Shown here: piece after piece, positions 20,301-52,988 of the stretch
Numbering within the stretch: position 1 is the stretch's first letter
Layout: every line of letters begins with the position of its first letter
Source: Macrostomum lignano
Taxonomy: Eukaryota
Length of the DNA: 64,000 nucleotides
Direction of reading: 5' to 3'
Assembly: GCA_002269645.1 (NCBI GenBank)
Contig: NIVC01003919.1
Location: 5,668-69,667, forward strand
The notes under the pieces: model-generated
Database searches by the model: none
Told to the model about the DNA's origin: nothing
Seen by the model: only the letters and a program-made list of their open reading frames with translations
Position numbers and translations under genes: made by a program

Positions 20301-20796
20301 AGCAGACTTGGGTGGTCGCCGATGGTTTGAACTCCTTGCGTCGGAGCGCAACCAGCCACTTTCTCTTCATTTCAGTGTCTTTTGGAAAAAAATGGAAGGA
20401 CACTGCCGGAGACATTGACGAGTTGTTCGAGCAGCCTAGAGCGCAGCAAAAGCTGCCGTGACTTTTTCTGCTAGGCAGTTTTGAAGAATTAGATTCTTCC
20501 ATGGCAGTTCGATTTGGTGAGGATTGATTTAGATTAGACTGAAGCAGCTTGCTTTGTATTTCAAGTATGTGTTTTATAAGTTTATATTTTTGGCCCCAGA
20601 CCACTTTAATATATAGCTACATATCAACGCAGGCGGAAAGAAAAGCAGGCCTGTACCCTAACTTCTTGCCCAAGCACAATTATCGATCGTTTTCGAGTAG
20701 GGAGAGAGGGACCATTTTTTCCACTGTCATTTGGTCAAAAACAAGCCCAAGCAAGAAATGCGGGATGCGCAGTCTAGTTATATTTCTTGGTCTGTG
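17314..20796 (-). mobile_element. P-element superfamily DNA transposon, 3483 bp
   Basis: perfect 32-bp TIRs (cacagaccaagaaatataactagactgcgcat at 17314-17345 and its complement at 20765-20796); 8-bp TSD gtgcctgc at 17306-17313 and 20797-20804. Confidence 0.95.
17675..20502 (-). CDS. THAP9/P-element transposase, intronless, ~942 aa if one frameshift at ~18030 is corrected
   Basis: THAP domain (CCALGCSN..FHFFP..W..CSVHF..AVP), coiled coil, ADEM / DVPHMLKLIRN / LSQDFLELFF motifs, C-terminal YIAG..C..C..GGLIFPS split across two ORFs. Confidence 0.92.
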
Positions 20797-24384: not shown

Positions 24385-24653
24385 TGTTGTGTACGCTCGT
24401 ATGGACTTTTGGTTTAGCAAATGCACTAATGCTTCCCTTCTTTTGTCTATAGTCTAGGGTACAATCTTTTATTTCTTTAAGAGCCGAAGGCTAACAGTAT
24501 TACAAAAAGGCAAGCAAGACGTGCGCTAGCTAGAGGCAAATAAAGCTTGTGAACAGCTCGTATTTTAAATAATGCTTCTTCGACTTGACTTTGATGTCAG
24601 ATGGTAGCCTGGAGGCAATAGTCGGTATAGAAGCAGAAGAAGAGGACATAACA
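24385..24653 (+). repeat. 5' LTR (269 bp)
   Basis: tgttgtg...ataaca; differs from 3' LTR by ~7 substitutions and 2 indels (hand alignment). Confidence 0.92.
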
Positions 24654-25958
24654 ATGGCGAGGAGTGTAAAAATCGGAGAGTTCGACGTGGCTAAACCGGA
24701 GCAATGGGAAGCTTATGAAGAACGACTCGAGCAGTTTTTCGTCGTAAACAAAGTGACCGAGGAGGCACATAAGCGAGCAAATCTGATTACAGTGATTGGT
24801 AATGACTGCTATCAATTGCTCCGCAACCTGCTGTCACCAAAGAAGCCCAAGGATGTGAACTTCGACGATCAAGTCAAGGCCCTGAGGGAGCATTTTAACC
24901 CAAGGCCTAAGATCGTTGTCGAGAGATTCAACTTCCACAGCAGAGCCCAACATGAAGGAGAAAATGTGAGCGATTTCATCGCAAGTCTGCGGAAGTTGGC
25001 TGCCACGTGTGGTTTTAATGAATTCTTGGACGAGGCACTGAGAGACAGGTTCGTTGTCGGCCTAAGGAATCGCCTGACACAGCAGCGTCTGTTGCAAGAA
25101 GACACACTGACACTAACTGGAGCACTTACCCTTGCGACTGCGATGGAAGCAGCGGAAAGAGGTGTGGTGACAATTTCGTCAACCGGTGCAATCCAGGCGG
25201 TGAAGTCTTCGAGAGCCAGTAAAAATCTGACAGACGGCTTGTCAGAGAAGAACAACAGAAACAATCAATCTGGATGCTTCCGCTGCAATGCACAAGATCA
25301 CTGGGCAAAGAACTGCCCCTACCGTAGCAAGACGTGCAGCAAGTGCGGTCGAGTGGGACATAAAAGTGATGCCTGCCGCACAAAGGACAGGACTAAAGAT
25401 TCCGGAGGTGGAAAGCAAAAGAAACTCAGCTCGTCCAGACATAAGAGACACGGCAGAGTGCACTATGCACAGGACAAAGCTAGTTCAACCAGCTCACACA
25501 GCAGGGACTCAAACTGTACGAGTCAGGGACACCACAGGGAGTGCTTTGAAGTCAGGACAGTGTGCTCGACTGGACAGGTCGCGCATGTCACTTCTCCACC
25601 ATACGAGTGCGAACTGGAACTGAACGGAAAAGCTGTAAGATTTCAAGTGGATACTGGTGCGGATAAAACCCTGATCAACGAGACCAGCAAGCAACTAGGC
25701 CTGAAGCTTTCAAGGACTACCGTAAGGTTGTCCAGCTACACGGATCACTCAATCCCAGTATTAGGTGAAGCAACAATCGACGTGGTTAGCCACAACGTCC
25801 GGCGTTACCAATTGCCTGTACTGATTGTCAAAGGAGAACGAGTAAATCTGCTTGGACGCGACTGGCTTTCTAAGATCAAGATTGACTGGGACAAGTTTGC
25901 GAGTGTGAACGTGACCACATTAGTCCAGCCTATTGGATCTATTGGTAAGGAGGCATGA
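24654..25958 (+). CDS. Gypsy gag + aspartic protease
   Basis: MARSVKIGEFD..W..Y.ERLEQFF; two CCHC knuckles; FQVDTGAD protease site. Confidence 0.9.
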   Translation: MARSVKIGEFDVAKPEQWEAYEERLEQFFVVNKVTEEAHKRANLITVIGNDCYQLLRNLLSPKKPKDVNFDDQVKALREHFNPRPKIVVERFNFHSRAQHEGENVSDFIASLRKLAATCGFNEFLDEALRDRFVVGLRNRLTQQRLLQEDTLTLTGALTLATAMEAAERGVVTISSTGAIQAVKSSRASKNLTDGLSEKNNRNNQSGCFRCNAQDHWAKNCPYRSKTCSKCGRVGHKSDACRTKDRTKDSGGGKQKKLSSSRHKRHGRVHYAQDKASSTSSHSRDSNCTSQGHHRECFEVRTVCSTGQVAHVTSPPYECELELNGKAVRFQVDTGADKTLINETSKQLGLKLSRTTVRLSSYTDHSIPVLGEATIDVVSHNVRRYQLPVLIVKGERVNLLGRDWLSKIKIDWDKFASVNVTTLVQPIGSIGKEA

Positions 25959-28900
25959 GCAAGTGTTTGCTGAGACATTGGGAACCATTAAAGGATTGAA
26001 GGCCAATATAGTGCTGAAGGAGAATTCAATACCAAAGTATTTCAAAAGTCGGCCAGTTCCATTTGCAATCAAGGGTCTCATTGAGGACGAGCTCAAAGAG
26101 TTTGCAAGCCCAAGGAATCATCACGAAGGTGAAGGCATCGGATTTCGCATTGCCAATCGTTCCTGTTCTCAAGCGCGATGGAAAATCAGTGATAATTTGC
26201 GCTGACTTTAAAAGGACAGTCAATCCACAATTAGAGGTCGACAAGTATCCTCTGCCACGACCAGAAGAAATTTTTGCAACATTAAATGGCGGGAAATATT
26301 TTACCAAACTGGACATCTCGCAAGCATTCCTGCAGCTTGAGTTGGAAGAATCCTGTAGAAGGTTCACCACTATCAACACTCATCTCGGTCTGTTTCATTA
26401 TAACCGACTCACAATGGGACTGGCATCCGCACCGGCTCAGTTTCAGGAGGCCATGGAGAAAATACTGCAGGGCCTGGACGTCGTTGTATACATAGATGAT
26501 ATTCTGGTGTCTGGAACCAGTCTGGAAGACCACGATAATAGGTTGAACGCTGTGTTGGAGCACCTTTCAGATTATGGCGTGCATTTAAACAGAAAGAAGT
26601 GTGAAATTCGTCTCAACAAGATTGCATTCCTCGGATACGTTATTGACGAAAATGGACTTCACCCATCAAACGAGAAAGTTGAGGCAATTCACAATGCACC
26701 GGCACCAACAAATGCAACCGAAGTTCGCTCTCTAATTGGAATGATAACCTACTACGCGAAGTTCATCCCGAATCTGTCGTCGATTCTGGTACCGCTCAAT
26801 CGACTGTTGTGCAAGGAATCGGAGTTTCACTGGAGTGAGGAGTGCAACGCTGCATTTGACAGAGTGAAGAAAACGCTGACATCTGACCGAGTGCTAGCGC
26901 ATTTCGATCCGAAGAAGCAGCTCGTTCTACAAACGGATGCTTCAAAGTATGGAATCGGATGTGTCATCTCGCACGTGATGCCGAATGGTGATGAAAGGCC
27001 AGTTGCCTATGCTTCGAGGACGCTATCAAAGCCGGAGATTAACTACTCGCAGTTGGAGAAGGAAGCGCTGGCCATAGTATTCGGAGTAAAAAGGTTCCAC
27101 CAGTACCTGTTTGGACATCATTTCGTGCTTGTGACGGACCATAAGCCGCTCCTAACCATCTTTGGAGACAAAAAGGATATCCCTAGCATCGCAGCAAGTC
27201 GTCTTCAGCGTTGGGCCGTACTTCTGTCCGCCCACCAATACACAATCAAATTTCGAAGGACAGAGGACCATTCAAATGCGGACGCGCTTTCACGCTTACC
27301 AGATCGAGCCAAGAACATCTCATGTGACAAAATTCTGGAAGTCAGGCTTGAGATGCTACCGATCACGGCAGAGACGATTAGAACCGCGACACGGAAGGAC
27401 GCAGAACTTCGAAAAGTCGTTCACTACTGCCAAAACGGCTGGCCAGAAACAAGTGAGCCAGGTTTGGAACAGTATTTTCGTAAAAAAAATGAGCTTTGTA
27501 TCGAGCAAGGAGTGATTTTCTGGGGACTGCGCGTCGTTATTCCAAGGAGTGTGCAACGAATGGTTTTGGAGTTGCTTCACGACGGACACCCTGGAATAGT
27601 TGCTATGAAGTCTATCGCTAGGCTGCATGTTTGGTTTCCTGGAATCGATAGTGCCATCGAAGACCTAGTCCGAAGCTGTGAAGGTTGCCAGTTGCAAAGA
27701 AATTTACCTGCACAGGCACCTGTACAACCTCTTGTTTGGCCAGAGCAGCCATGGACAAGAATCCAGATGGACTACATGGGACCATTTCACGGATATTTCT
27801 GGCTTATCATTGTCGACGCAACTAGCAAATAGGTCGAGATTTTTCCTATGAAACATGCGACTACAAGTAAGACAATTGAGTGCCTGCGAGATACTTTCAC
27901 AAGGTTCGGAATTCCTCAGCAAGTCTTAAGTGATAACGGCAGTCAGTTCTGCTCATCTGAGTTTCGTGCGTTTTTGAAGCGAAATAATATTCGTCAAATT
28001 TTAACGGCTGTTGGACATCCGCGTACTAATGGACTTAGCGAAAGGATGGTCCAGACTGCGAAGTCTGCTATTAAAGCCGGAATCAAAACGCATGGAGACC
28101 CAATACTGAGTATGCAGAACTTCTTGTTCAGATACAGAAGTACACCTCACTCTACAACTGGTAGGACGCCAGCTGAAATGATGCTGTGCTACAAGCGCCG
28201 GACTCAATTGGACTTTCTTAGGCCGGACACCTACTCAAAAGTACTGGATAAGCAGACTGATGTGACCGAACGACAAAGCCATAGAGGAGCGTCGCCGAGG
28301 AGTTCCAGGAGGGAGAAAAAGTTCTGACGCTGGATTTCAGAAGGGAGAAAGAGAACAGATGGATTCCTGCCGAGGTGGTCACCCGCACAGGACCAATGTC
28401 TTACAGACTGCAGGTCAACGGTCAAATCTGGAAGAGGCACGTTGATCAAATTGTCAAGACAGACGTTCTTCCCACCCGAATTCCACCAATCATGAAGAGG
28501 CATCAGGACGATCAGACTGATATATTCCTGCACGGTCACGAGTGCGGGAATGACATCTGCACGAGTGCGCGCTAGCGCACGAGTGCACGATGTCCTTCAC
28601 GCACGAGTGACCGTGAAGGAATTCCATTGTCGGGTGATTCATCGTGCAGGAATGCACAAAACCGTGCAGGAATGCATTTCTGCGCCTAATGCTTTTTCAG
28701 TGAGATTTTACCATAGACATCCATTCCTGCACGCAAAAGAGTGCAAGAATGCCATTCTTGCATGGAAAATCAGCCGACAATGACTTGGCTCGTGAGCAAA
28801 TGCAGAGTGAGGACATCTCAAATCCAGCAACCCAAAGCGTGCCCGTGCAAGACGAACCACAGACAACCGACTCAGACGGAACTCGTGGCAAGAGCACTGA

Positions 28901-31570: not shown

Positions 31571-32615
31571 AGGCAGCCGTTCTGGCGTTGTTGAAAACAA
31601 CCGGAAGCTCGAGTTTGCGATGGTCTTGATGGTAGATCCGCTGCTCGCCTCCAGTACAATACTAGTCGGTTGTAGCGGATGCCTCGCGAAGAGATTCATG
31701 AAAGTCTTCGTGTTTAACAACGAAACGGTGGGGGGGGGATTGTCACTGACTATTGACTGGTTGTCGTTCCGATGCGAGGTACACAGGTTTCCTCAAGGAG
31801 TTCATCCCCGATCAACTCTTGAAGCGTCGTGAAAAGTGCCGAAGTTGCAAGTTCTCCTAAGGCCATCATCTAGTCACCGATGCTCTCGCTGTCGTGCTGG
31901 GCTCGCTACAAAAAAGGCGAATGACGCTCTGCAATGACACTTCTTGACTTCTCTTCTGAATTTGTACTTAAATTAAAGTACAAAAACATATTAAAAACGA
32001 CGATGGTGTTTAAAATCTTCAAGAGAAGAGTGCCGGTTTGTAATGATCTGGCTTTCTTAGTCAGTTAGTGCGTTAATATTGTATATGAAAGAAAGGCTTG
32101 GCAGGACAAGATTTGAGTTTCTTTGGAAAAGCAACGTGAGTTCGAGTCCTGAGGGTCCTCCATCGTCTTCTGTCACTAGGTGCAGAAACCTGTTAATGCA
32201 CCTGCTTGAGCTGCCATGACTAAATATGACAACAAGCAGGTATCAGCAATGGTAAAGTTTGCATTAACTAACATATTCACGCGCTGAACATGTGTTGACT
32301 TTTCCCACGTGTCCACAAAGTTAATCAGCTTGAGGGCCATCCGTCGGTGTTAAGACAATCTTAACACTGAAGTGTGTATTAGGGACGGAATCAATTATCA
32401 ATAAACCAATAATAGCAATACAGCGCTAAAATTAATATTACCAAATCAAAATATAAGACTGCGTGCCCAAATGTTTTGAATTTACTCTGAAATATAATTT
32501 TAGCATTCATATCCAGCATATAAATTGCCAGCGATCTGTAACCGTGACAGCCAACACCAACTGAGCTTTCATCAATGTCTGAATTTCAATAAGCCACACT
32601 TATTGGTGTTTCGAC

Positions 32616-35600
32616 ATGCAAATGCCGATGTGGCTGCTGCTGCTGCTGCTGCTGCTGGCCTCATCAGTGAGCACCAGCATCCGAGGAGACTGTGAGTGCG
32701 TTTTCACCAAATCAACAATTATAAATGAATAGCACGGAATTAAATTGAGCTGACTGCTCAGCCTGTGCTCACCATTGCAGGCGAGTTCCCGATTCGCCAG
32801 AGCCGCGTCCTGAGCTCCTGGCAGTCGTCCTTTGATGACGGCCCGACTTGCTTTTACAACAGAAGCCGCGCTGATGAGGAATCCGTGCTCAAAAACAAAA
32901 CCTTTAGCTACCGGTTCTTCCACAGCAAAGGCCAGAGCTCAGCAGACGGCGGGTTTCACTGGTTTGCAGTGCAGCTGAATGAGCCAGTGCTCATCAGATC
33001 TGTGACTGTGAAGGGCAGAGAGGGTGAGTCACTCACTCAAATGCGGGCTCAAAGTCTGCTTCCTCTGCTCACGGTGCTCTCGCATTCCAGATCATGCATC
33101 GTGGGTCTTTGAAAGAGCCAGAGGCGTTGAGATCTGGACATCAGACAGCAGCAGCCAGCTGTTCTCAGGAGATCACTGCAGCTCAAGGAGCATGAGCAGC
33201 CAGTTCAATCAGTCCCAGCAGCACTGGAGACTGTGTGGGGTCACGGAGAGCAACAATTCACAAATCATAGCTGGAGAGATCTTCACAGTGAACTGCGTTG
33301 CAGAGGTAAGATTACAGATAGAGATGTGTACAAAAAGTTGAAAAGCTGAGGGCGTGATCAACTCAAGTAATTAATGATCATGCAATGCATGGAGGAGGAA
33401 CTCTCTTGACCTTAAATCCATTTCGATACTTATAAATCTGTTTGACACATCTTTCTAAGTCTATTTCAACAAAATTGATATGCAATTCAGACAGTTCTCG
33501 TTTCACTCTCAATTGTCTCTTAAGACAAATTCATATTAATCAGTCATCATCTTATTTAGATAAGTTTTATTCAGTCATTTGGGCGACACTTTCCAATCTT
33601 TCCAATCTTTCTATTCGATGCTGGCATGCCTAAACAGACGCATAGAAATAATTTTCTAAAATGATATTACGAAATTGCATAATGAGATATCTGAATCACA
33701 GAATTTACAAAACACACAGTATATTCTGTGGTCTGAATTGCATATCGGTTTTGTTGAATTAGACAGGGAAAATGTGATAACTCATAACGTATTTTGTTTT
33801 ATCATTCGATTCTCTCAACTTTAGACAAGGCAGCTGCTGCTCAGAAGAAACATTACGTCAGCCGATGCATCGAGCTATCACGATTACATGAGCTTTGCAG
33901 ATCTCAGGCTTCAAACATTTCAGCTGGGTGAGTCCGCAACTCTGATATGTAATTCTGCAGATTGTGGATACTGTCGAAACATGAATTAATGCAAAAAGCC
34001 CATCAAGATGATGCTCTTTGAAAATCCACTTTGGAAATTTACAGAGGCCTCAAAAGCTGAGTTGGTGGCGGAGAACTCCAGCTTCTCAGTGAGCTGCGCA
34101 CTGCGATGCAGCGGCCCACCGGACGCAACTTCAAGGGATCTGCAGCTCTGCTCTCCGAACGGCAGCTGCACTGCATCACAGGAGCTGCGGGTTCCCAGAG
34201 CGCAGCCTCAGCACTCTGGAAACTACACATGCAGACTGGGCTCTGTGGAAAAGCGCACTGGCGTGGCTGTGCTGTGTTAGTGGCAATACTTTGTTCGGCT
34301 TCATTTTAAATATACTTTCGGGCTTTCTCAAATGATAGAAATATTATTAAATGCTCGCATGGTCGAAACACAGAAAATTATTCTCTTTGTAAATCTTGCT
34401 GCATCACTTAACATGCATTTTTTATCAAGCTAGCATTTTCAGAAGCGGTCAAGGAATATTGTGCTAAACTCGATCTCTCCAGCGCCCTCAGGCCCACAAG
34501 TGGTGGCGGAGAACTCCAGCTTCTCAGTGAGCTGCTCGCTGCACTGCAGCGGCTCAGATCTGTGCTCAAATTCAAGCACACTGCAGTTCTGCTTGCCGAA
34601 CGGCAGCTGCACAGGCAGCCACAGGATGGCCGTTGCAGTGGCGCAGCCTCAGCACTCTGGAAGCTACACCTGCAGACTGGGCTCTGTGGCGACTCGGACT
34701 TCCGTCACCGTACTGTGTGAGCTCTTGAAACTTTATATTTTGATGTGCACAAGCGACTAATGCTTTGAAACTTCTGAAAATGCTTCCAGTGAAAAGAAGT
34801 TTATTCTAAATATTAGAACTAGAATCATGAACGAGTAGGCACACGAGTCACAACGTGGCGCACGTTTCGCACCTGGAAATGAATGCTCTGTACATTATTT
34901 TTGTCTGACTTACGCTCGAATTCATTCCTAATTGACTTATTACACGCTTTTGTTTTCGAAAGCCCAGCTGAACAAATGAATTTGCTTCATTGGTTGAGTA
35001 ACAAAAATTACCTGCCTCTTTCTCATTCAGCATCCTCTCAGCCCCAGATCGTGGCGCAGAACTCCAGCTTCTCAGTGAGCTGCTCGCTGCACTGCAACTG
35101 CTCAGATCTGTGCTCAAACTCAAGCGGACTGCAGCTCTGCTTGCCGAACGGCAGCTGCACAGGCAGCCACAAGATGGCCGTTGCAGTGGCGCAGCCTCAG
35201 CACTCTGGAAACTACACCTGCAGACTGGGCTCTGTGGAGTCTCTGACTTCAGTCACCGTGCTGTGTGAGTGGGCGAACTACTTTGATTTGCATGTACACT
35301 CTTCTATAGATGGTTTAACTGAGAAACCTAATCGAGCACTGACTGCATCGCTGCAGACCCGCCATCGAAGGTGTACATAACATTTCTGAATCAGGGTAGC
35401 TGCGTCAGCCCATCGGATGTGACAGTGCAGTTCGCTTCCTCTGCGTCTCATCCGCGTGTTGAGCACAAATGCAGCGCCGCTGACGCCAAGGGTGTCTCAC
35501 TGCTCAATATGACACGCCTGTCTTTGGTGAGTTGCAGTTTGAGAAAATATGAGTCAAGATTGGCTGACTGAATCATATGACGCGATGCGCATTGCAGAGC

Positions 35601-36988
35601 TCGGGTGGAGACGGCTCTGTCAGCCAGTGGAAACTGGACAGCGATGGAGAACAGAGTCTGGGACTGAAAATCCGCATCAACTGTAGCGCACTGCAGGAGC
35701 TTCCAAAAAATCAGCTTCCAGGCCACCAACCTCCAGGACTTAGCTGAGCTGACCTGCCCAATGCTTGCCACCATCCAATCTCTCTTTGGTGTCCTCGCAG
35801 CATCCGTCATCTGTAGCGCCGGTCTGGTCTTCCTCAGTGCAACCATCGCAGCTCTGGTAAATGATAAGCCTCTCCTTGAGTCAGTTCTCGTCACAGACAC
35901 ACACTAGTTAACTTACTAGATTGCTTGAAAAAACATGAAACACCTAAATACAGCGCGTGTGCATGGCGAGCAAGAGATAAGAGGAATGGTGTCCCTGCCC
36001 CCAGCCAGGCGATAAACAGTTAGGCGCTATGTCTAACCTTAACCTCTCTCCTTACTGCTCTCTCATTGGCTGAGCTAGATTGGGCCTGCCCCCTAGGCTG
36101 AGTTCGTCCGTCTAACTTTCACCTCTCTCCTTACTGCTCTCTCATTGGCTGAGCTAGATTGGGCCTACCCCCTAGGCTGAGTTTCGTCCGTCTAACTGTA
36201 ACCTCTCTCCTTACTGCTCTCTCATTGGCTGAGCTAGATTGGGCCTACCCCCCTAGGCTGAGTTTTGTCCGTCTAACTTTAACCTCTCTCCTTACTGCTC
36301 TCTCATTGGCTGAGCTAGATTGGACCTACCCCCTTCTATGCTGAGTTTCCGTCCGTCTTGCATTTACTGTGTACATGGAGTTAAACATTCTCAACTCCAT
36401 TATGCTGGTGAGGTTGCAAACCTCGAGGACGGAGAGGAAATTTTATCTGTGACAGAAAATTAAAGTGACACTGCGCAAAACAACTACTGAAAAAGAGTTG
36501 ACGCTCTGCTTTTTTTCAGAAATTTTATTGCGAGTGGCATATTTAGTTATTTTTATATCTGCAGTTCTCGTGTACTAATTGCCAGTGCATAATGCCCTGC
36601 GTTTCAGCGCAAGGCTCGGTCCAGCCACCCACCAGCAGCCCCGCCGAATGTCAACTCAACTTGCATCGTGGACTCGGAGCTGCAAGCGGTTGCTGAAGAA
36701 GCTCCCGTACAAGGCGGGGTGAGTCTCTGCTAATGGGGATAGCCATTGCTTTTTGGAATGCAAAAGACAGCGGGTCATTTGGCTTCGGTAGCGGCTGTCG
36801 GGTGCTGCTTAGATGTCAAGCAGATGGAGCCGCCTGCCCACCTCACCCGATTCCAGGCAGTCGGCAGCAGCGAGCCGGAGTGCAGCTACCTCACTGTGGC
36901 CGCCGCTGCACCAGCTGGTCAGGATGAGCTGCGCGACTCCGACAGCGAATGCACCGAGTTCATCGAGATGGTGGCTGACGGCGACTGA
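32616..36988 (+). CDS. paralog A: signal peptide + F-type lectin-like + 3 Ig + C2-like Ig + TM + YxxV tail (11 exons; +1 A at 35705-35710)
   Basis: exons 32616-32691, 32781-33023, 33091-33305, 33825-33927, 34045-34275, 34483-34716, 35031-35264, 35357-35526, 35598-35856, 36608-36718, 36857-36988; phase-compatible; SFSVSC...SGxYTCRL Ig motifs. Confidence 0.8.
36033..36356. repeat. ~80-bp intronic tandem repeat x4
   Basis: unit starts at 36033, 36112, 36192, 36273. Confidence 0.9.
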
Positions 36989-37799
36989 CTCAGCTGGGGT
37001 GCTGCAGGCTGGAGAGCAAGCAATGAAAATTTCACTCCGGCATCTGAAATTGATCTTGAATGGATCTAAGATCCTAATGATAATAAATTACTCGCAATAA
37101 ATGAGTTAATTCAGAAATCGTTAAAACAAAACATGGTTGTTAAGTGGAAATACAAACTGGAAAATATCGAGCATCTGGAGGCTGCAGGCCCATGGAGTTC
37201 TTTGGTGAACATTTAAGAGTGGCGCATTAGCTTCCTTTATAATGAATATGTTGCGTTCATAATGGATTTTTTTCTGCTAAATCAATTGGTATTTTACTAT
37301 TTAGTCTGTTGTGAATTCGTAACTCATATATTTGCCCTTACTGTAGTCTCTCTATCTCTCTCTCTCCCTCTGCCAACCCTCCCCACCCCTTCCATGCTTG
37401 CAACTTGTTGTGAGCTATTTTCTTAGAGTACTTTATTTATTTTTTTGGTGCCACTGCACTAGACCCAATCAATTGATGAACTATTATTGTAGTTGTTTAT
37501 TTGTCCAGCCTATGTCTGCAACTTTCTCACCCCTGATTATTATTATTATCCCTCCCCCTCCGTGCTCTCTCATTGGCTGTCGCTGTTTTCTGTAATTCTG
37601 GTTTTCTACCCCCCAGTCGCGTTTTGTGTGGCTGCAGCCAATCCCCGCTCGCTCTCTCTACGCACCCCGCCTTTTCTCTTACCCTGCAGCTTTTGCCCCA
37701 CCCCATGTTGTGCTGGCAGATATTTATTGGCGTGCGCTCCTGTCCTCTCCCAAACCTCGAACTAATTTTACACCAATAATTCGGAATACCAAATATATA

Positions 37800-38209
37800 C
37801 TAGTAGCGTAAGAGCCCCGGATAGGGGCTGACGCGCTCGAACTTATCAAGTGAAAAAAAGTCCTCTCCCCCCCCATGCGACCGCTTCTCCTCTGACTCCT
37901 TCGCCGCAAATAGTATATGACAATAAACCAAAAACAAGCGTGCCAACAATCGTCTTCAACATAGACGCCCAGCGCGCCAAGTATCAGCGCCACAGTAAGT
38001 ATCGTTCTGTTCCTGTTATTTCGGGGTCAAGTGCCTCTAGGATTTTGTCACCGGGGCCTGTGCGTTCGCTGCGACCCTGGTTGCTGGCCTACTGCCTGCG
38101 CGTTTGTGCGACAGTGGGTTGGCAAGCAGCAGGACTGGGGCTGCGTTTTCCTGCTCGTACAGAGCGCCAGACGTAGCTGGCTGGTCCGTCTCGGGACACA
38201 ACATTAAGA
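37800..38209 (-). mobile_element. possible non-autonomous Helitron (~410 bp)
   Basis: on - strand A|TC start, GC hairpin (agcccc/ggggct at 37813-37829) 9 nt before CTAG|T end. Confidence 0.4.
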
Positions 38210-38738
38210 TTATCATTATCATTATGATGTTGAGGAAAACTTTGAAATAATTTTCACGTTCAAGCTTTTGTTTATCAAAGCGTCAAAAAAAATTCAATCA
38301 TGAATTCTGTCAGATTTGTGGCGCAAAGTCTTCGAAATCCGTGAATTTGGTTTTTGTTAATAAATTGGTGTCTATTTTTACTTGTCAACCACAGTAAGCT
38401 GCGCCGAATGCATCCAAATTAGTGAATTTTTAGACGGAGGCGCTGTCCAATTTCTGACTGGAACAAACACTTGTTAACCTCAGTTAAACTGGTTGCAAGT
38501 GCAAGTGGTGAATGAGTTTAAGATTCCTGCAGGGTATTCTTGGCAGCAGTTGGCTATATTCGGACGGTAACATCAACTGGGCGGGCTAGGAATGCATATG
38601 CTGTGAATCACGTGACCGTCCAAAAGACTTTAAACAAAAGATCGCTAATTTAAGTGTTTTTTTCGACCATTTTCCGAATACGTCGCCGCCAACAAGACAC
38701 TTCAGAAGAGAATAAAATCTTGAAGAAAGCACTTGTCA

Positions 38739-41700
38739 ATGAGATCCTGGCTCCGTTTGATGTCGCTGCTGCTGGCATCAGTGAGCGCTACAGTCTACGG
38801 AGACTGTAAGTCTGTGCTTGCTACTGAATCTCATGCTCTGCTGAAACTAATTACCAATTTGTGCTTGACTTCCTGTGCTCACCACTGCAGGTGAGTTCCC
38901 GATTCGCCAGAGCCGCGTCATGAGCTCCTGGCAGTCGTCCTTTGATGACGGCCCGACTTGCTTTTACAACAGAAGCCACACTGATGAGGAATCCGTGCTC
39001 AAAGACAAAACCTTTAGCTACCGGTTCTTCCACAGCAAAGGCCAGAGCTCAGCAGACGGCGGGTTTCACTGGTTCGCAGTGCAGCTGAATGAGCCACTGC
39101 TCATCAGATCTGTGACTGTGAAGGGCAGAGAGGGTGAGTCACTCACTCAAATGCGTGCTCCAAGTCTGCTGTCTCTGCTCACGGTGCTCTCGCATTCCAG
39201 ATGACAAATCGCATGTCTTTGAAAGAGCCAGAGGCATTGAGATCTGGACATCAGACAGCAGCAGTCAGCCGTTCTCAGGAGATCACTGCAGCTCAAGGAG
39301 CATGAGCAGCCAGTTCAGAGAGTCCCAGCAGCACTGGAGACTGTGTGGGGTCACGGAGAGCAACAATTCACAGATCGCAGCTGGGGAGATCTTCACAGTG
39401 AACTGCGTTGCAGAGGTGAAATTACAGATAGAGATATGTTTACAATAAAATGTAAAAAATCGGAGGGCGTGATTAACTCTAAATTATATGCTTGTAAAAT
39501 GCATAAAAGAGGAACTCTCTTGACCTGAAATACATTTCGATACTCCCAAATCTGTCTGGTAAAGTGGTGGCATCTCGTAACGCATTTATGTTTTATCATT
39601 TGATTCTCTCAACTTTAGACAAGGCAGCTGCTGCTCAGAAGAAACATTACGTCAGCCGATGCATCGAGCTCTCACGATTACATGAGCTTTGCAGATTTCA
39701 GGCTTCAAACATTTCAGCTGGGTGAGTCCACAACTCTGATATGCAGATCTTCAGATTGAGGATAGTGTCGAAGTATGAAGATAAATGCTTTAAATTTCAT
39801 CAAGAAGAAGCTCTTAATAAGCCATGTTAACAAATTACAGAAGCCTCAAAAGCTCAGTTGGTGGCGGAGAACTCCAACTTCTCAGTGAGCTGCGCACTGC
39901 GATGCAGCGGCCCACCGGACGCCACGTCAAGGGATCTGCAGCTCTGCTCTCCGAACGGCAGCTGCACTGCATCACAGGAGTTGCGGATTGCCAGAGCGCA
40001 GCCTCAGCACTCTGGAAGCTACACCTGCAGACTGGGCTCTGTGGCGACTCGGACTTCGGTCACCGTGCTGTGTGAGTTCTTTTAACTTTACATTTTGATG
40101 CAGTATGTCAACAATGTCATTAATTAGCAGGAGTAGACGGAATAAGTTTTTTTTTCAATAAAATTCGAATTTGCTGTTCAGTTAGAAATAATCTTTGCAG
40201 ACCCGCCGTCGAACGTGTCAGTCCCAGTGCTGCACTGTCAGAGTCAGTCAGTTGGGATGGTGCAGTTCGCATCGTCGGCATCTGAGCCGGCGCCTGAGCA
40301 CAGATGCAGCGCTGAGTCTGTTGGTGGAATGACAGCGCAGAATCTTACTTTTCAGTCACTGGTATGTTTCCTGTATGCTCTGCTCTGATAGATCCTGTGT
40401 TTTTGGAGAATCACAATACAGTATGCCGATGCGGCATTGCAGAACTCAAACGGGAGCGGCTCCTTTAGTCAGTGGAAGCTGGACATTGGCCGGGACTGGC
40501 CCAATGGCGGGACTGTACTCATCAACTGCAGTGCTCTGCTGCTAAATAATCTCAGCTTCCACTTGTTCCAGTCGAGCATTGTACAACTCAACTGCTCAAC
40601 GTCTAGGACCATCGCAGCCCCGATCCTCTTCAGTGTCGGACTGACCCTCTTGGCTGTTGCAATAACTGCTTTGGCCGTGTTGGTGAGTCAGGAAGTAAAA
40701 ACACTGTTTTGGCGCTAGTATATTTCACAATAAGTGACAACTCCTGGAACAGCTTCAGCGCAGGGCTTGTCCGTCAAGAGATGAGCCACCAGCAACCGGA
40801 TTTAGTCCAAACTCGGACTGCATCGTCGCCTCCGACACTCGAATAGTTGCTCCAGTGGAACGAGAGACTCCTGTGAGTCTGGCTTGTAATAATAATTATT
40901 ACTATTAGCTCGCCAAAAACCCTCAATTACCCCAGCTAATGCTGGCACCCATTTTACAGCTGGGTGAACTGAAGCGATGCAGAGTTGAGTGTCTTGCTCA
41001 AGAACGCAAACTGTTCCAAGTGGGTCGAGATTCGAACCCCCGACCTTTCATTAGAGTGGGTGCCATCTCATTAGAGTGGGTGCCATCTCATTAGAGTGGG
41101 TGCCATTTCATTAGAGTGGGTGCCATCTCATTGTAGTGGGTGCCATCTCATTGTAGTGGGTGCCATCTCATTGGAGTGGGTGCCATCTCATTGGAGTGGG
41201 TGCCATCTCATTAGAGTGGGTGCCATTTCATTAGAGTGGGTGCCATCTCATTAGAGTGGGTGCCATCTCATTAGAGTGGGTGCCATCTCATTGGAGTGGG
41301 TGCCATCTCATTAGAGTGGGTGCCATCTCATTAGAGTGGGTGCCATCTCATTAGAGTGGATGCCATCTCATTAGAGTGGGTGCCATCTCATTGGAGTGGG
41401 TGCCATCTCATTAGAGTGGGTGCCATCTCATTAGAGTGGGTGCCATCTCATTGTAGTGGGTGCCATCTCATTGGAGTGGGTGCCTCTCATTGGAGTGGGT
41501 GCCTCTCATTAGAGTGGGTGCCATCTCACTGGAGTGGGTGCCATCTGACTGGAGTGGGTGCCATCTGACTGGAGTGGGTGCCATCTGACTGGAGTGGGTG
41601 CCATCTCATTGGAGTGGGTGCCATCTCATTGGAGTGGGTGCCATCTCACTGGAGTGGGTGCCATCTCACTGGAGTGGGTGCCATCTCATTGGAGTGGGTG

Positions 41701-42030
41701 CCATCTCACTGGAGTGGGTGCCTCTCATTGTAGTGGGTGCCATCTCATTGGAGTGGGTGCCATCTCACTGGAGTGGGTGCCATCTCATTGGAGTGGGTGC
41801 CATCTCACTGGAGTGGATGCCATCTCACTGGAGTGGGTGCCATCTCACTGGAGTGGGTGCCATCTCACTGGAGTGGGTGCCACCTCACCCGATTCCAGGC
41901 AGTCGGCAGCAGCGAGCCGGAGTGCAGCTACCTCACTGTGGCCGCCGCTGCACCCGCTGGTGAGGCCGAGCTGCTGGACTCCGACAGCGAATGCACCGAG
42001 TTCATCGAGATTGTGGCTGACGGTGACTGA
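38739..42030 (+). CDS. paralog B: signal peptide + F-type lectin-like + 1 Ig + C2-like Ig + TM + YxxV tail (9 exons, apparently intact, ~500 aa)
   Basis: exons 38739-38805, 38891-39133, 39201-39415, 39619-39721, 39841-40071, 40201-40361, 40443-40682, 40759-40872, 41899-42030; exon-by-exon homology to paralog A. Confidence 0.82.
40915..41047 (-). mobile_element. tRNA/CORE-type SINE fragment (family 2) in last intron of paralog B
   Basis: B box ggttcgaatc (41029-41038, - strand) followed by agcaagacactcaactctgc...cagctgtaaaatgggtgcc. Confidence 0.6.
41048..41885. repeat. 20-bp minisatellite (~42 units)
   Basis: unit ca(t/c)t(a/g)gagtgggtgccatct. Confidence 0.95.
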
Positions 42031-42644
42031 TTGAAATGGTTGCTTATCAAGGAACTGCTGGCTGAAAAGCATGGAAGTGACGTAGTGCTCGTAGTGCTGT
42101 TAAATCGCTTTTTAGTTGGAAAGCAAAGTACCTTATTCATTAATTCGAAGGTAGGGAAAATTAAGCATATCAACCTTCATTCTACCAATTTTAAAATTAG
42201 TCAAAATGTGTTTAGAGTATTACTAAAAATAGGCACAGATCTAAACCGCGTATTAAACACTGACAACGCTTAATTTCGTTATTCGAGAAGTGCAGAATGC
42301 GACAGGATTGTCATACATTAATCTATTTATCAAGCTTTGCATCCTGTATTTGTATTCCATTTCTTCACGGCTGTCTTGCTGATGTGCCCTTGAATATCCC
42401 TGTAGAATATAATTAGTATGGCTGCATGCCGAGTAAGATTTCGATGAACCTCGGTCGCCACTTTCTGTTATTCAGGCTGCACTACACAAATAGTCACAGG
42501 TGAATGTTTGAGTGCGGATGCACCTGTCTGCTTTCTGAATTGCAGCAACATTGCTGGGTTCGAATCAGAATTTTTTCAGCCTCCCACAGAGGCTGTCAGT
42601 ACTTCTCAGATGTGTTAGCATTCAACGGATGTCAGTATTTTACG

Positions 42645-43345
42645 TGTCAGCATCCCTCAGATGTGTCAGCTTCCCTCAGATGTGAGCATCCCTCAGATGT
42701 GTCAGCTTCCCTCAGATGTGAGCATCCCTCAGATGTGTCAGCTTCCCTCAGATGTGAGCATCCCTCAGATGTGTCAGCTTCCCTCAGATTTGTCAGCATC
42801 CTCAGATGTGTCAGCATCCCTCAGATGTGTCAGCATCCCTCAGATGTGAGCATCCCTCAGATGTGTCAGCATCCTCAGATTTGTCAGCATCCTCAGATGT
42901 GTCAGCATCCTCAGATTTGTCAGCTTCCCTCAGATGTGTCAGCATCCCTCAGATGTGTCAGCTTCCCTCAGATGTGAGCATCCCTCAGATGTGTCAGCAT
43001 CCCTCAGATGTGTCAGCATCTCACAGATGTGTCAGCAACCCACAGATGTGTCAGCATCCCACAGATGTGTCAGCATCCCACATTTATATGTGTCAGCATC
43101 CCACATTTATGTGTCAGCATCCCACATTTATATGTGTCAGCATCCCACATTTATGTGTCAGCATCCCACATATGATGTCAGTGGTTCTCAGATGTGTCAG
43201 CATCCCACAGATGTGTCAGCATCCCACATTTATATGTGTCAGCATCCCACATTTATGTGTCAGCATCCCACATTTATATGTGTCAGCATCCCACATTTAT
43301 ATGTGTCAGCATCCCACATATGATGTCAGTGGTTCTCATATGTGC
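42645..43345. repeat. compound 18-21 bp minisatellite
   Basis: agatgtgtcagcatccctc units grading into atttatatgtgtcagcatcccac units. Confidence 0.9.
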
Positions 43346-43735
43346 CAGCACCTCATTGAATTTGAAAGTACTTATGACAAGCCTGCAACAAAAATACATT
43401 AAATAATGATTTAAACGACTTAAAAACTAAAGCCAAAGTCTTTGCAGAACAAAGTTAAACTTACGAAAGCAGATACTCAAGCAGCAGGGCATACAGTTAT
43501 ATTAAAGCATATTATTGAAAGCTAGAGTAACAATTAAAAAACATAAAAAGCAACTCAGTAAAATGAAGCCCTGTTAACATTCGGGAATAATTCAGCAGAG
43601 TATCTCATTCAGAAGCCAATCTCGCAGCTATGTTGCAGAGAATTACGCAAAACAAACGGGATTTGAAGAAACTGGGATTAAATTTGTTAGCAACTGTCCA
43701 AGGTCAAAATGCTGTTTCACATTTCGAAGCCATAA

Positions 43736-52988
<9,253 letters not shown>

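What the first reader, a model, noticed from the sequence alone, without database searches (positions are those of the whole stretch)
32616..42030. Tandem pair of F-type-lectin / Ig / TM / tyrosine-motif receptors: a Siglec-like architecture in an invertebrate
Seen: both genes encode a signal peptide, then a domain with FFHS..HWFAVQL..IRSVTV..R-E-D-x7-R, Ig domains, a membrane-proximal C2-like domain, a TM helix and a short tail. Established: the F-type lectin fucose-binding motif is H-x26-R-x-D-x4-R/K; here it is spaced H-x31-R-x-D-x7-R in both copies. Inference: a glycan-sensing signalling receptor family that combines a lectin tip on an Ig stalk, functionally analogous to Siglecs and to molluscan lectin-Ig hybrids but with a different lectin fold. 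I do not recognise this architecture as described. This is the best candidate for a novel system in the window.
Basis: partly seen in the sequence, partly recalled or inferred. Interest (0 to 1): 0.8.

Follow-up and report, generated by a model that had tools for sequence, protein, structure and literature searches.

The report
Flatworm lectin-like Ig membrane receptor pair
Two neighbouring genes of the flatworm Macrostomum lignano encode membrane receptors with a very diverged F-type-lectin-like tip on an immunoglobulin stalk; the family is seen almost only in this worm, sugar binding and signalling are unproven, and one copy is frameshifted as assembled.

Summary
The observation largely holds. 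Two head-to-tail genes on the + strand (G1 32616-36988, G2 38739-42030) splice with GT-AG introns. Each encodes a signal peptide, a ~187-aa N-terminal domain, Ig domain(s) (three in G1, one in G2), a further beta-sandwich domain, a TM helix and an ~80-aa tail with CSYLTV. G2 is a clean 501-aa ORF. G1 has a frameshift at an A6 run (35705-35710) and stops before its TM. The window is Macrostomum lignano.

The N-domain models confidently as a jelly roll. Its top three PDB matches are F-type lectins. hhalign gives 91% probability against F-lectins (score 44.8; shuffled null 11.6±2.2) and 0.4% against animal discoidin domains. It is not a canonical F-lectin:
- Pfam scores are 13-17 bits, against 68-86 for real F-lectins.
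- The calcium motif is absent.
- The motif spacing is H-x31-R-x-D-x7-R.
- In the profile alignment only the R, D and R align; the fucose-binding His falls on an invariant Ser.

The tail has no canonical ITIM, so "Siglec-like" is an analogy of layout only. The family has about a dozen or more paralogue groups, in tandem arrays, found only in M. lignano plus one metagenome contig. Verdict: a lineage-restricted new variant of mosaic F-lectin-like receptors; ligand and signalling are unproven.

The parts
32616..36988 (+). Gene G1, 11 exons: 32616-32691, 32781-33023, 33091-33305, 33825-33927, 34045-34275, 34483-34716, 35031-35264, 35357-35526, 35598-35856, 36608-36718, 36857-36988
   Evidence: Hand-built model; every intron is GT-AG. 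Exons 3-5 are identical to P0011. Repaired protein: Ig_2 34.7 bits, 3 stretches.
32781..33927 (+). G1 N-terminal F-lectin-like jelly-roll domain (exons 2-4). His codon 32921-32923, Arg 33017-33019, second Arg 33114-33116.
   Evidence: 92% identical to the G2 domain. H-x31-R-E-D-x7-R confirmed. Fold and profile evidence come from paralogue P0001 and the family alignment.
34045..35264 (+). G1 three Ig-domain exons (34045-34275, 34483-34716, 35031-35264), each phase 1-1
   Evidence: tblastn with the G2 Ig exon: 88, 70 and 61% identity. Pfam Ig_2 above its cut-off.
35357..35856 (+). G1 membrane-proximal beta-sandwich domain (two exons) and TM helix (about 35764-35856, in a shifted frame)
   Evidence: Homologous to G2 exons 6-7. 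The TM helix is in frame only after the A-run is corrected.
35705..35710 (+). A6 homopolymer at which G1's reading frame breaks; premature stop at 35745-35747
   Evidence: As-is translation ends ...PPGLS*. A5 or A8 restores the frame through the TM helix.
36857..36988 (+). G1 last exon: AVGSSEPECSYLTV...SDSECTEFIEMVADGD*; YLTV at 36887-36898
   Evidence: 91% identical to the G2 last exon. dN/dS 0.28.
38739..42030 (+). Gene G2, 9 exons: 38739-38805, 38891-39133, 39201-39415, 39619-39721, 39841-40071, 40201-40361, 40443-40682, 40759-40872, 41899-42030. Intact 501-aa ORF.
   Evidence: GT-AG introns, CDS length divisible by 3, single terminal stop. Homologues at E=1e-95.
38891..39721 (+). G2 N-terminal F-lectin-like jelly-roll domain (exons 2-4). 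His 39031-39033, Arg 39127-39129, Asp split across 39133/39201-39202, second Arg 39224-39226.
   Evidence: motif. (fold of the 62%-identical paralogue domain). (profile similarity to F-lectins).
39841..40071 (+). G2 single Ig-domain exon
   Evidence: Pfam Ig_2 E=3.6e-4 and Ig_3 E=7.7e-4, both below cut-off on their own. 88% identical to G1 Ig1.
40201..40682 (+). G2 membrane-proximal beta-sandwich (40201-40361 and 40443-40610) and TM helix (40611-40682)
   Evidence: AF2 of the homologous P0002 segment: 7 strands, pLDDT 78.5. Only weak Ig-like matches. Hydropathy peak at residues 396-405.
40759..42030 (+). G2 cytoplasmic tail exons (40759-40872, 41899-42030), separated by an intron filled with a 20-bp minisatellite. 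YLTV at 41929-41940; C-terminal ...SDSECTEFIEIVADGD*.
   Evidence: The tail motif EPECSYL[ST]V and C-terminal CT..[FY].EIVAD are shared with P0004 and P0005.

Best explanation
G1 and G2 are tandem paralogues of a multigene family seen almost only in Macrostomum lignano. They encode type I membrane glycoproteins.

Shown here: the order of parts is signal peptide, N-terminal beta jelly roll, one (G2) or three (G1) Ig domains, one more beta-sandwich next to the membrane, a single TM helix, and an ~80-residue cytoplasmic tail. The jelly roll is a highly diverged relative of the F-type lectin domain. Its fold and profile match F-lectins, and the Arg-x-Asp...Arg loop and one disulfide align. The canonical His position, the Cys-Cys pair and the calcium site are not kept.

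Inferred mechanism: the jelly roll is held away from the cell on the Ig stalk and binds an extracellular ligand. A glycan is the most likely ligand, bound in the pocket lined by the conserved FFHS, GRED and R loops, and not necessarily fucose. The conserved tyrosine motif of the tail (CSYLTV; in paralogues also T-x-Y-L-D/E-I-V) then couples occupancy either to SH2-domain signalling proteins after phosphorylation or to AP-2-mediated internalisation.

G2 is the intact copy. G1 is either a recent pseudogene or carries a homopolymer assembly error.
For: - Gene models, intact G2 ORF, signal peptide, TM helix and 11 N-x-S/T sites, all in the ectodomain (residues 49-390).
- Family membership: 5 hits at E=1e-95 to 1e-64, all M. 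lignano. Only 18 hits among 1.84e9 representatives. Every member whose source was looked up is M. lignano except one JGI metagenome contig.
- AF2 model of the P0001 N-domain (62% identical to G2): pLDDT 87.5, pTM 0.87. Foldseek ranks 1-3 are F-lectins 3cqo, 4gwi and 1k12 at E=4e-6 to 1.4e-5.
- hhalign of the family against 5 solved F-lectins: 91%, score 44.8, 119-142 colinear columns. R81/D83/R91 pair with AAA R79/D81/R86, and C112/C151 pair with AAA C108/C124. AAA is the eel fucose lectin, PDB 1k12.
- The column-shuffled null scores 11.6±2.2 with a maximum of 20. Against animal discoidin domains the result is 0.4%, score 15.6.
- The only recurrent weak Pfam hits are the two families that real F-lectins hit.
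- Ig_2 is above its cut-off in G1. The membrane-proximal domain models as a 7-strand sandwich.
- The tail motifs are conserved between paralogues whose N-domains are only ~60% identical. The last exon has dN/dS 0.28.
- The family lies in tandem arrays elsewhere: 3 genes plus a fragment in 22 kb of NIVC01002544.1.
Against: - No Pfam model reaches its cut-off on the N-domain (13-17 bits against 27.8).
- The strict fucose motif fails (x31 and x7 instead of x24-26 and x4). In the profile alignment AAA His52 pairs with an invariant Ser54, while the family's His49 pairs with the non-binding AAA His47.
- No Cys82-Cys83 equivalent. AIDGN aligns with AVL-KP, so the calcium site is missing.
- In divergent paralogues the R/D/R positions are not kept.
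- Fold similarity is moderate (TM ~0.5), and CBM32 (a bacterial carbohydrate-binding module), muskelin and APC10 domains score almost as well in Foldseek.
- The model coordinates could not be inspected, so the pocket geometry is untested.
- CSYLTV has Cys at position -2 and so is not a canonical ITIM or ITSM. In G1 and G2 the second motif has Phe in place of Tyr (TEFIEIV).
- No expression, binding or phosphorylation data exist.
- N-domain dN/dS between G1 and G2 is 0.82, on few changes.
Confidence: 0.55

Rival explanations
1. Protein-binding adhesion or guidance receptor. The jelly roll has lost lectin activity and binds a protein or lipid partner, as the jelly-roll heads of Eph receptors, neuropilin b1 and factor V/VIII C2 do. 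On this reading the molecule is an IgSF cell-adhesion molecule.
For: The fucose motif and calcium site are not met. The R/D/R positions vary in distant paralogues. According to the F-lectin review, F-lectin-fold domains lacking the triad bind phospholipid (FVa-C2) (PMC5712786). The family-specific, nearly invariant SGDHCSSRSMSSQF insertion has no F-lectin counterpart.
Against: The closest relatives by both fold and profile are sugar-binding F-lectins, not discoidin domains. R81, D83 and R91 are kept in G1, G2 and P0004/5, and His49 in nearly all members. No homology to any known adhesion family was found.
Confidence: 0.25
2. Endocytic or sorting lectin receptor. The tail works as a trafficking signal rather than a signalling motif: YLTV as YxxPhi for AP-2, and SDSE as a CK2-type acidic cluster. 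The receptor would deliver bound glycoconjugates to endosomes, for example in gut phagocytes.
For: YLTV fits YxxPhi. A Ser-rich acidic cluster (LLDSDSE; NSDRNSDTASD in P0004) lies between the two tail motifs. There is no canonical ITIM or ITSM in G1/G2 and no charged TM residue for adaptor pairing. That these motifs act as sorting signals rests on general knowledge, not on a test here.
Against: Paralogue tails carry motifs closer to SH2 ligands: TVYLEIV, TEYLDIV, YENS. There are no localisation data.
Confidence: 0.2
3. Reproductive (gamete or mating) recognition molecule, by analogy with oyster bindin F-lectins. The family would be rapidly duplicating under sexual selection in this hermaphrodite.
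For: The family is lineage-restricted and tandemly expanded. N-domain dN/dS is 0.82 between G1 and G2. F-lectin repeats act as sperm bindins in oysters (PMC5712786).
Against: No expression data. The dN/dS rests on about 26 changes. The differences do not cluster significantly (p=0.19). Bindins are secreted F-lectin repeats, not TM receptors.
Confidence: 0.1
4. G1 is a dead copy, and the pair is one working gene plus a decaying duplicate in a transposon-rich region.
For: Frameshift and premature stop before the last strand of the stalk domain and the TM helix. A DB copy of the same gene (P0010) carries a different frameshift in Ig1. Mobile elements lie upstream at 18-28 kb.
Against: The break is a single-base length change in an A6 homopolymer, a typical assembly error. 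All other exons, splice sites and the tail downstream of the break are intact, and the last exon has dN/dS 0.28.
Confidence: 0.3

Closest known systems
F-type lectins (eel agglutinin AAA 1k12, striped-bass MsaFBP32 3cqo, streptococcal lectinolysin and SpX modules)
   Same: Jelly-roll fold; these are the top three Foldseek matches. The profile alignment is colinear from the KATQS-like strand (WQSS) to the last strand. Equivalents of Arg79, Asp81, Arg86 and of the Cys108-Cys124 disulfide are present.
   Different: Only 12-18% identity. Pfam scores are 13-17 bits against 68-86. The spacing is H-x31-R-x-D-x7-R. The His52 position is Ser in the profile alignment. There is no Cys82-Cys83, no Cys50-Cys146 and no h2DGx calcium motif. 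There are a 19-residue conserved insertion (SSRSMSSQF...) and an extra Cys pair. The domain is membrane-anchored on Ig domains rather than a soluble single or tandem domain.
Drosophila Furrowed / CG9095 (F-lectin domain + C-type lectin domain + CCP repeats + TM)
   Same: An invertebrate type I membrane protein carrying one N-terminal F-lectin-type domain. CG9095 also deviates from the basic triad (PMC5712786).
   Different: The stalk here is made of Ig or Ig-like domains, with no C-type lectin or CCP domains (Pfam). No sequence relationship was detected.
Siglecs (for example CD22)
   Same: The layout: a ligand-binding tip, an Ig-domain stalk, a single TM helix and a short tyrosine-containing tail. 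The best PDB sequence hit of G2 was CD22 d6-d7, but it is not significant (E=0.13).
   Different: The tip is a jelly roll, not a V-set Ig domain with the sialic-acid Arg. The tail has no canonical ITIM or ITSM in G1/G2. No homology. Sugar binding is unshown.
Molluscan lectin-Ig hybrids (Biomphalaria FREPs, CREPs, GREPs; compared from my own knowledge, not tested here)
   Same: Lineage-specific, expanded invertebrate families that combine IgSF domains with a lectin-type domain.
   Different: Those proteins are secreted, with the Ig domains N-terminal and a fibrinogen, C-type lectin or galectin domain C-terminal. Here the lectin-like domain is N-terminal, of another fold, and the protein is membrane-anchored with a cytoplasmic tail.
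Discoidin-domain membrane receptors (neuropilins, DDR1/2, Caspr)
   Same: Same fold superfamily at the tip of a type I receptor.
   Different: Profile comparison with animal discoidin domains gives 0.4%. There are no CUB, MAM, kinase or LamG domains.

Membership tests
F-type lectin domain (FTLD) | Beta-barrel jelly-roll 'F-type' fold | tested here: met
   AF2 model of paralogue P0001 N-domain: pLDDT 87.5, pTM 0.87. Foldseek ranks 1-3 are F-lectins (3cqo, 4gwi, 1k12), with TM about 0.5; other members of the superfamily score nearly as well.
F-type lectin domain (FTLD) | Sequence recognised by the curated domain model that canonical F-lectins hit (Pfam PF22633 / PF00754) | tested here: not met
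   The family scores 13-17 bits against a cut-off of 27.8. AAA scores 86 bits and lectinolysin 68 bits. An HMM of the family found no canonical F-lectin among 1.84e9 proteins.
F-type lectin domain (FTLD) | Remote homology by profile-profile comparison | tested here: met
   hhalign 91%, score 44.8. 150 column-shuffled nulls reach at most 20. Discoidin control 0.4%.
F-type lectin domain (FTLD) | Fucose-binding motif H-x24(26)-R-x-D-x4-R/K (basic triad His52, Arg79, Arg86) | tested here: not met
   The spacing is H-x31-R-E-D-x7-R. In hhalign R, D and R align, but AAA His52 pairs with invariant Ser54 and family His49 pairs with AAA His47. The 3D position of His49 could not be checked.
F-type lectin domain (FTLD) | Calcium-binding motif h2DGx (AIDGN in AAA) | tested here: not met
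   The aligned segment is AVL-KP / SVLKDK. The motif definition is from PMC5712786.
F-type lectin domain (FTLD) | Disulfides Cys50-Cys146, Cys108-Cys124 and the vicinal Cys82-Cys83 | tested here: inconclusive
   C112 and C151 align with Cys108 and Cys124. There are no equivalents of Cys50/146 or Cys82/83, and the family has its own extra conserved Cys25 and Cys131. Some true F-lectin domains also lack Cys82-83.
F-type lectin domain (FTLD) | Binds L-fucose or fucosylated glycans | not testable with these tools
   Needs recombinant protein and a glycan array or ITC.
Siglec | N-terminal V-set Ig domain with the conserved sialic-acid-binding Arg | tested here: not met
   The N-terminal domain is a jelly roll, not an Ig domain.
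Siglec | Cytoplasmic ITIM ([SIVL]xYxx[IVL]) or ITIM-like motif, or a charged TM residue for DAP12 | tested here: not met
   The only tail Tyr in G1/G2 sits in E-C-S-Y-L-T-V, with Cys at -2. The second motif is TEFIEIV (Phe, not Tyr). The TM helices carry no charged residue.
Immunoglobulin superfamily | Ig domain recognised by a curated model, with the B- and F-strand cysteines | tested here: met
   Ig_2 34.7 bits against a cut-off of 27, three stretches, in repaired G1. Each repeat has the SVSC...YTC pattern. G2's single copy alone is below cut-off (21 bits).
Discoidin / F5-8 type C domain | Profile similarity to animal discoidin domains | tested here: not met
   hhalign 0.4%, score 15.6, 28 columns. 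PF00754 E-values are 0.003-0.26, below cut-off.
Furrowed-type F-lectin membrane proteins | F-lectin domain together with a C-type lectin domain and CCP repeats | tested here: not met
   No CTLD or Sushi hits in G1, G2 or paralogues. UniProt's 'Sushi/CUB/MATH domain-containing' names for members are mutually inconsistent, and no such Pfam domain is on record for them.

The most novel reading that the evidence does not exclude
Macrostomum has independently built a multigene family of immune-type receptors. A diverged F-lectin head senses glycans on an Ig stalk, and tails carrying ITSM-like T-x-Y-L-D/E-I-V motifs (and pYxN-like motifs in some paralogues) signal through SH2 proteins. This would be a flatworm counterpart of the Siglec or SLAM logic built on a different lectin fold, with tandem arrays diversifying the head.
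Probability: 0.12. Interest if true: 0.7.

Novelty: new variant of a known kind. Interest (0 to 1): 0.4.

Why it matters
Mosaic F-type lectin proteins are known with C-type lectin, pentraxin, CCP, FA58C and TM modules (PMC5712786). An F-lectin-like head on an Ig stalk with a tyrosine-bearing tail is not among the architectures listed there, and no curated domain model detects this head.

If the head binds glycans, the family would extend the known sequence range of F-lectins: a different His position, a longer binding loop and no calcium site. It would also give a genetically tractable flatworm a candidate family of surface pattern- or self-recognition receptors. If the head does not bind glycans, it is an example of an F-lectin fold re-used for another ligand.

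In either case it remains a lineage-restricted, uncharacterised family. Members are already deposited as 'Ig-like domain-containing' or 'hypothetical' proteins. The value is moderate until binding and expression are measured.

Tried and rejected
- phmmer and hmmsearch of G2 and of the N-domain profile against PDB sequences gave nothing significant. The best hits were CD22 d6-d7 at E=0.13 and an EB3 fragment at E=1.6.
- The spliced window proteins could not be submitted to the representative search, to structure prediction or to the contig look-up. Paralogues P0001 and P0002, 62% and 82% identical in the relevant parts, were modelled instead.
- Ig and stalk could not be modelled together because MAFFT misaligned the fragments. 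The stalk was modelled alone.
- The last homologue search, run with an F-lectin profile to look for F-lectin + Ig architectures, listed only the 120 best of 2309 hits. Nearly all were vertebrate (mostly fish) fucolectins without Ig domains, so it did not answer the architecture question.
- P0011 has no gene on record in the contig collection, so the G1 A-run could not be checked in another assembly.
- Searches for the family in Macrostomum papers and for locus tag Mlig012084 found nothing relevant. A search for an F-lectin architecture survey found only the Vasta review.
- The G1/G2 differences do not cluster significantly in the R-x-D...R loop (3 of 15 within 4 residues, p=0.19). That idea was dropped.
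- The ZU5 hit (24 bits) on G1 residues 386-453 overlaps Ig3 and the stalk, and I read it as spurious.
- My first repair of the G1 frameshift (A7) was wrong. A5 or A8 is required.

Full report
**What is in the sequence**

The region is eukaryotic and spliced. Reading 32400-37200 and 38400-42300, I built two gene models on the + strand in which every intron is GT-AG.

G2 has 9 exons spanning 38739-42030 and gives an uninterrupted 501-aa ORF. Its parts, in order:
- signal peptide MRSWLRLMSLLLASVSATVYG;
- a ~187-aa N-terminal domain on three exons;
- one Ig exon;
- a two-exon membrane-proximal domain;
- a TM helix at residues 397-420 (hydropathy peak 2.5) followed by RRA;
- an 81-aa tail.

All 11 N-x-S/T sites lie in the ectodomain (residues 49-390).

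G1 has 11 exons spanning 32616-36988 and the same plan, but with three Ig exons. The finding's start and end coordinates are G1's ATG and G2's stop codon. tblastn finds exactly these two copies in the window.

The quoted strings and the spacing H-x31-R-E-D-x7-R are present in both copies.

One correction is needed. As assembled, G1's frame breaks at an A6 run (35705-35710) and stops at 35745-35747. That is before the last strand of the stalk domain and before the TM helix. A5 or A8 would restore ...LPK(K)ISFQATNLQDLAELTC followed by the TM helix. This may be a homopolymer assembly error or a real lesion. A database copy of the same gene (P0010) carries a different frameshift.

**Whose genes these are**

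All homologues with a named source are from the free-living flatworm Macrostomum lignano. P0011 (UniProt A0A1I8GI92) matches G1 exons 3-5 residue for residue. The window is therefore M. lignano, and those splice junctions are independently supported. Junctions further downstream are supported by paralogue models P0001 to P0005 and P0029.

An HMM of the N-domain found only 18 proteins at E<1e-3 among 1.84 billion representatives. Every one whose source was looked up is M. lignano, except P0013, which sits on a 1.6-kb JGI metagenome contig. The hits fall into about a dozen or more paralogue groups.

Members differ in how many modules they carry:
- P0004: head + TM + tail;
- P0017: head + Ig + TM;
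- P0016: head + stalk domain + TM;
- G1 and G2: head + Ig + stalk domain + TM.

The family also lies in tandem arrays elsewhere. Three genes and a fragment sit within 22 kb of contig NIVC01002544.1. The chimeric model P0031 runs from a P0002-type gene into a G2-type gene.

In this window the pair is flanked by a P-element/THAP-type transposase ORF, a Ty3-like LTR retrotransposon and a tubulin cofactor D gene.

**The N-terminal domain**

Curated sequence models do not recognise it. Pfam gives only F5_F8_type_C_2 (PF22633) and F5_F8_type_C (PF00754) at 13-17 bits, against cut-offs near 28. The eel fucose lectin AAA (PDB 1k12) and lectinolysin score 86 and 68 bits on PF22633.

The spliced window proteins were not accepted for modelling, so I modelled the N-domain of P0001, which is 62% identical to G2, with a 16-row family alignment. 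The model is confident: pLDDT 87.5, pTM 0.87. Foldseek against the PDB puts three F-type lectins first:
- MsaFBP32 (3cqo), E=4.4e-6;
- lectinolysin (4gwi);
- eel agglutinin (1k12).

More F-lectins follow further down the list. CBM32 (bacterial carbohydrate-binding) modules, muskelin, APC10 and galactose oxidase domains score almost as well, with TM about 0.5. The superfamily is therefore certain, but fold alone only hints at the F-lectin family.

Profile-profile comparison settles more:
- Family alignment against five solved F-lectins: 91% probability, score 44.8, colinear over 119 to 142 columns.
- 150 column-shuffled versions of the F-lectin alignment: 11.6±2.2, maximum 20. The reversed alignment scores 6.5.
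- Four animal discoidin domains: 0.4%, score 15.6.

The domain is therefore a real but very distant relative of F-type lectins specifically.

**Is the sugar site kept?**

The review by Vasta et al. (PMC5712786) defines the family by four things: the fold; the motif H-x24-R-x-D-x4-R/K (His52, Arg79, Arg86 in AAA); the h2DGx calcium motif; and the disulfides Cys50-146, Cys108-124 and Cys82-83.

In the hhalign alignment:
- R81, D83 and R91 of the family pair with Arg79, Asp81 and Arg86, with a three-residue insertion in the loop.
- C112 and C151 pair with Cys108 and Cys124.
- AAA His52 pairs with an invariant Ser54.
- The family's near-invariant His49 (in FFHS) pairs with AAA His47, next to the aromatic pair Phe45/Tyr46.
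- AIDGN has no counterpart, and there is no Cys-Cys pair.

DSSP puts His49 at the end of a short strand after a helix, much as in AAA, but this is not decisive.

In more distant paralogues the R/D/R positions are not kept. A 19-residue insertion, SSRSMSSQF...C, is among the most conserved stretches of the family and has no F-lectin equivalent.

Taken together, two or three of the key contacts may survive in the G1/G2/P0004 subgroup. The strict motif is not met, and ligand specificity is open.

**Stalk and tail**

Repaired G1 scores 34.7 bits on Ig_2 (cut-off 27), with three stretches. Each repeat has the SVSC...YTC pattern.

The membrane-proximal segment was modelled from P0002. It folds as a seven-strand sandwich (pLDDT 78.5). 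It has only weak matches to Ig-like sandwiches: gamma-adaptin ear, nanobodies and CRIg, with best E=0.012. It is Ig-like in a generic sense, and C2 is not shown.

The tails of G1 and G2 share EPECSYL[ST]V and a C-terminal CT..[FY].EIVAD with P0004 and P0005, whose heads are only ~60% identical. The last exon has dN/dS 0.28.

CSYLTV has Cys at position -2, so it is not a canonical ITIM or ITSM. It does fit YxxPhi, and an acidic Ser cluster follows it. P0004 (TVYLEIV) and P0025 (TEYLDIV) have an ITSM-like T-x-Y-x-x-I, but G1 and G2 have Phe at that position. P0001 to P0003 end in EYENSEYKLENA.G.Y... Tyrosine-based tail function is plausible for the family. Whether it is signalling or sorting cannot be decided here.

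**Divergence of the two copies**

| Region | dS | dN/dS |
|---|---|---|
| N-domain | 0.056 | 0.82 (about 26 changes) |
| Ig exon | 0.197 | 0.33 |
| Last exon | 0.15 | 0.28 |

Intron 2 is 94% identical between the copies, and the flanks are unrelated. The low dS of the head may reflect gene conversion. The 15 amino-acid differences do not cluster significantly (p=0.19).

**Verdict**

Membership of the F-lectin family in the strict, motif-defined sense fails.

The Siglec comparison holds only as a layout analogy. No known adhesion or neural family matches.

The most likely function is a cell-surface recognition receptor whose jelly-roll head binds an extracellular ligand, probably a glycan, and whose tail tyrosine motif couples to SH2 or AP-2 machinery. 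The architecture and relationships are shown. Ligand, signalling and expression are inferred.

I rate it a new variant of a known kind (mosaic F-lectin-like receptors), of moderate interest.

Noticed in passing
window 18022-20604 (-): An 860-aa open reading frame encodes a P-element-type transposase, with THAP, Tnp_P_element HTH, TNP-like RNase H and GTP-binding insertion domains. It appears intact.
   Followed up: partly
window 24585-28327 (+): A Ty3/gypsy-type LTR retrotransposon coding region lies in three consecutive ORFs: gag with zinc knuckle and aspartyl protease, then RT-RNase H-integrase zinc domain, then integrase core. LTRs were not looked for.
   Followed up: partly
window 44429-52925 (-): Exons of a tubulin-specific chaperone D (TBCD) gene (ARM_TBCD, ARM_TBCD_2nd, TFCD_C) lie directly downstream of the receptor pair on the other strand.
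   Followed up: partly
window 41048-41887: A 20-bp minisatellite (TCATTGGAGTGGGTGCCATC, 42 copies, 95% matches) fills most of G2's last intron. It ends about 10 bp before the acceptor of the final exon. G1's corresponding intron has no such array.
   Followed up: partly
window 36031-36358 and 42644-43350: Further tandem arrays: an 81-bp unit x4 in G1's intron after the TM exon, and a 19-bp unit (GTGTCAGCATCCCTCAGAT) x33 with variants just downstream of G2.
   Followed up: no
P0002, P0029, P0031 (M. lignano paralogue models): Several deposited models of one paralogue jump from ...VKGRE straight into the Ig domain, omitting the second half of the jelly roll. In G1 and G2 the two omitted exons total 318 nt, so the skip is in frame. 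This is either an exon-skipping isoform or a mis-annotation. Half a jelly roll should not fold.
   Followed up: no
window 38654-38809 and 32525-32695; P0008, P0022: Two deposited partial models read the exon-1 region in the frame that is not the signal-peptide frame (…EILAPFDVAADGI-GEFPIRQ). This implies use of an alternative donor (ATCA|GTGAGC) about 20 nt upstream of the one I used. That transcript would lack the signal peptide.
   Followed up: no
L001 (NIVC01002544.1) about 10163, 14072, 18739 (+) and 2083-2261 (-): Another locus carries three family genes in tandem plus a fragment on the other strand. The third gene is 89% identical to G2 over exon 2.
   Followed up: partly
L002 (JGI metagenome 3300040801, contig Ga0450804_0569779) 284-919: The only family member not from M. 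lignano is a 211-aa ORF with a diverged head domain on a 1.6-kb environmental contig, presumably from another small flatworm.
   Followed up: no
UniProt names of family members: Members of this one family carry mutually inconsistent automatic names: Sushi, CUB, MATH, Ricin B-type lectin, Fibrinogen C-terminal, LAM_G, and Coatomer subunit zeta. No Pfam domain is on record for those whose precomputed column was shown. The names should not be trusted.
   Followed up: partly
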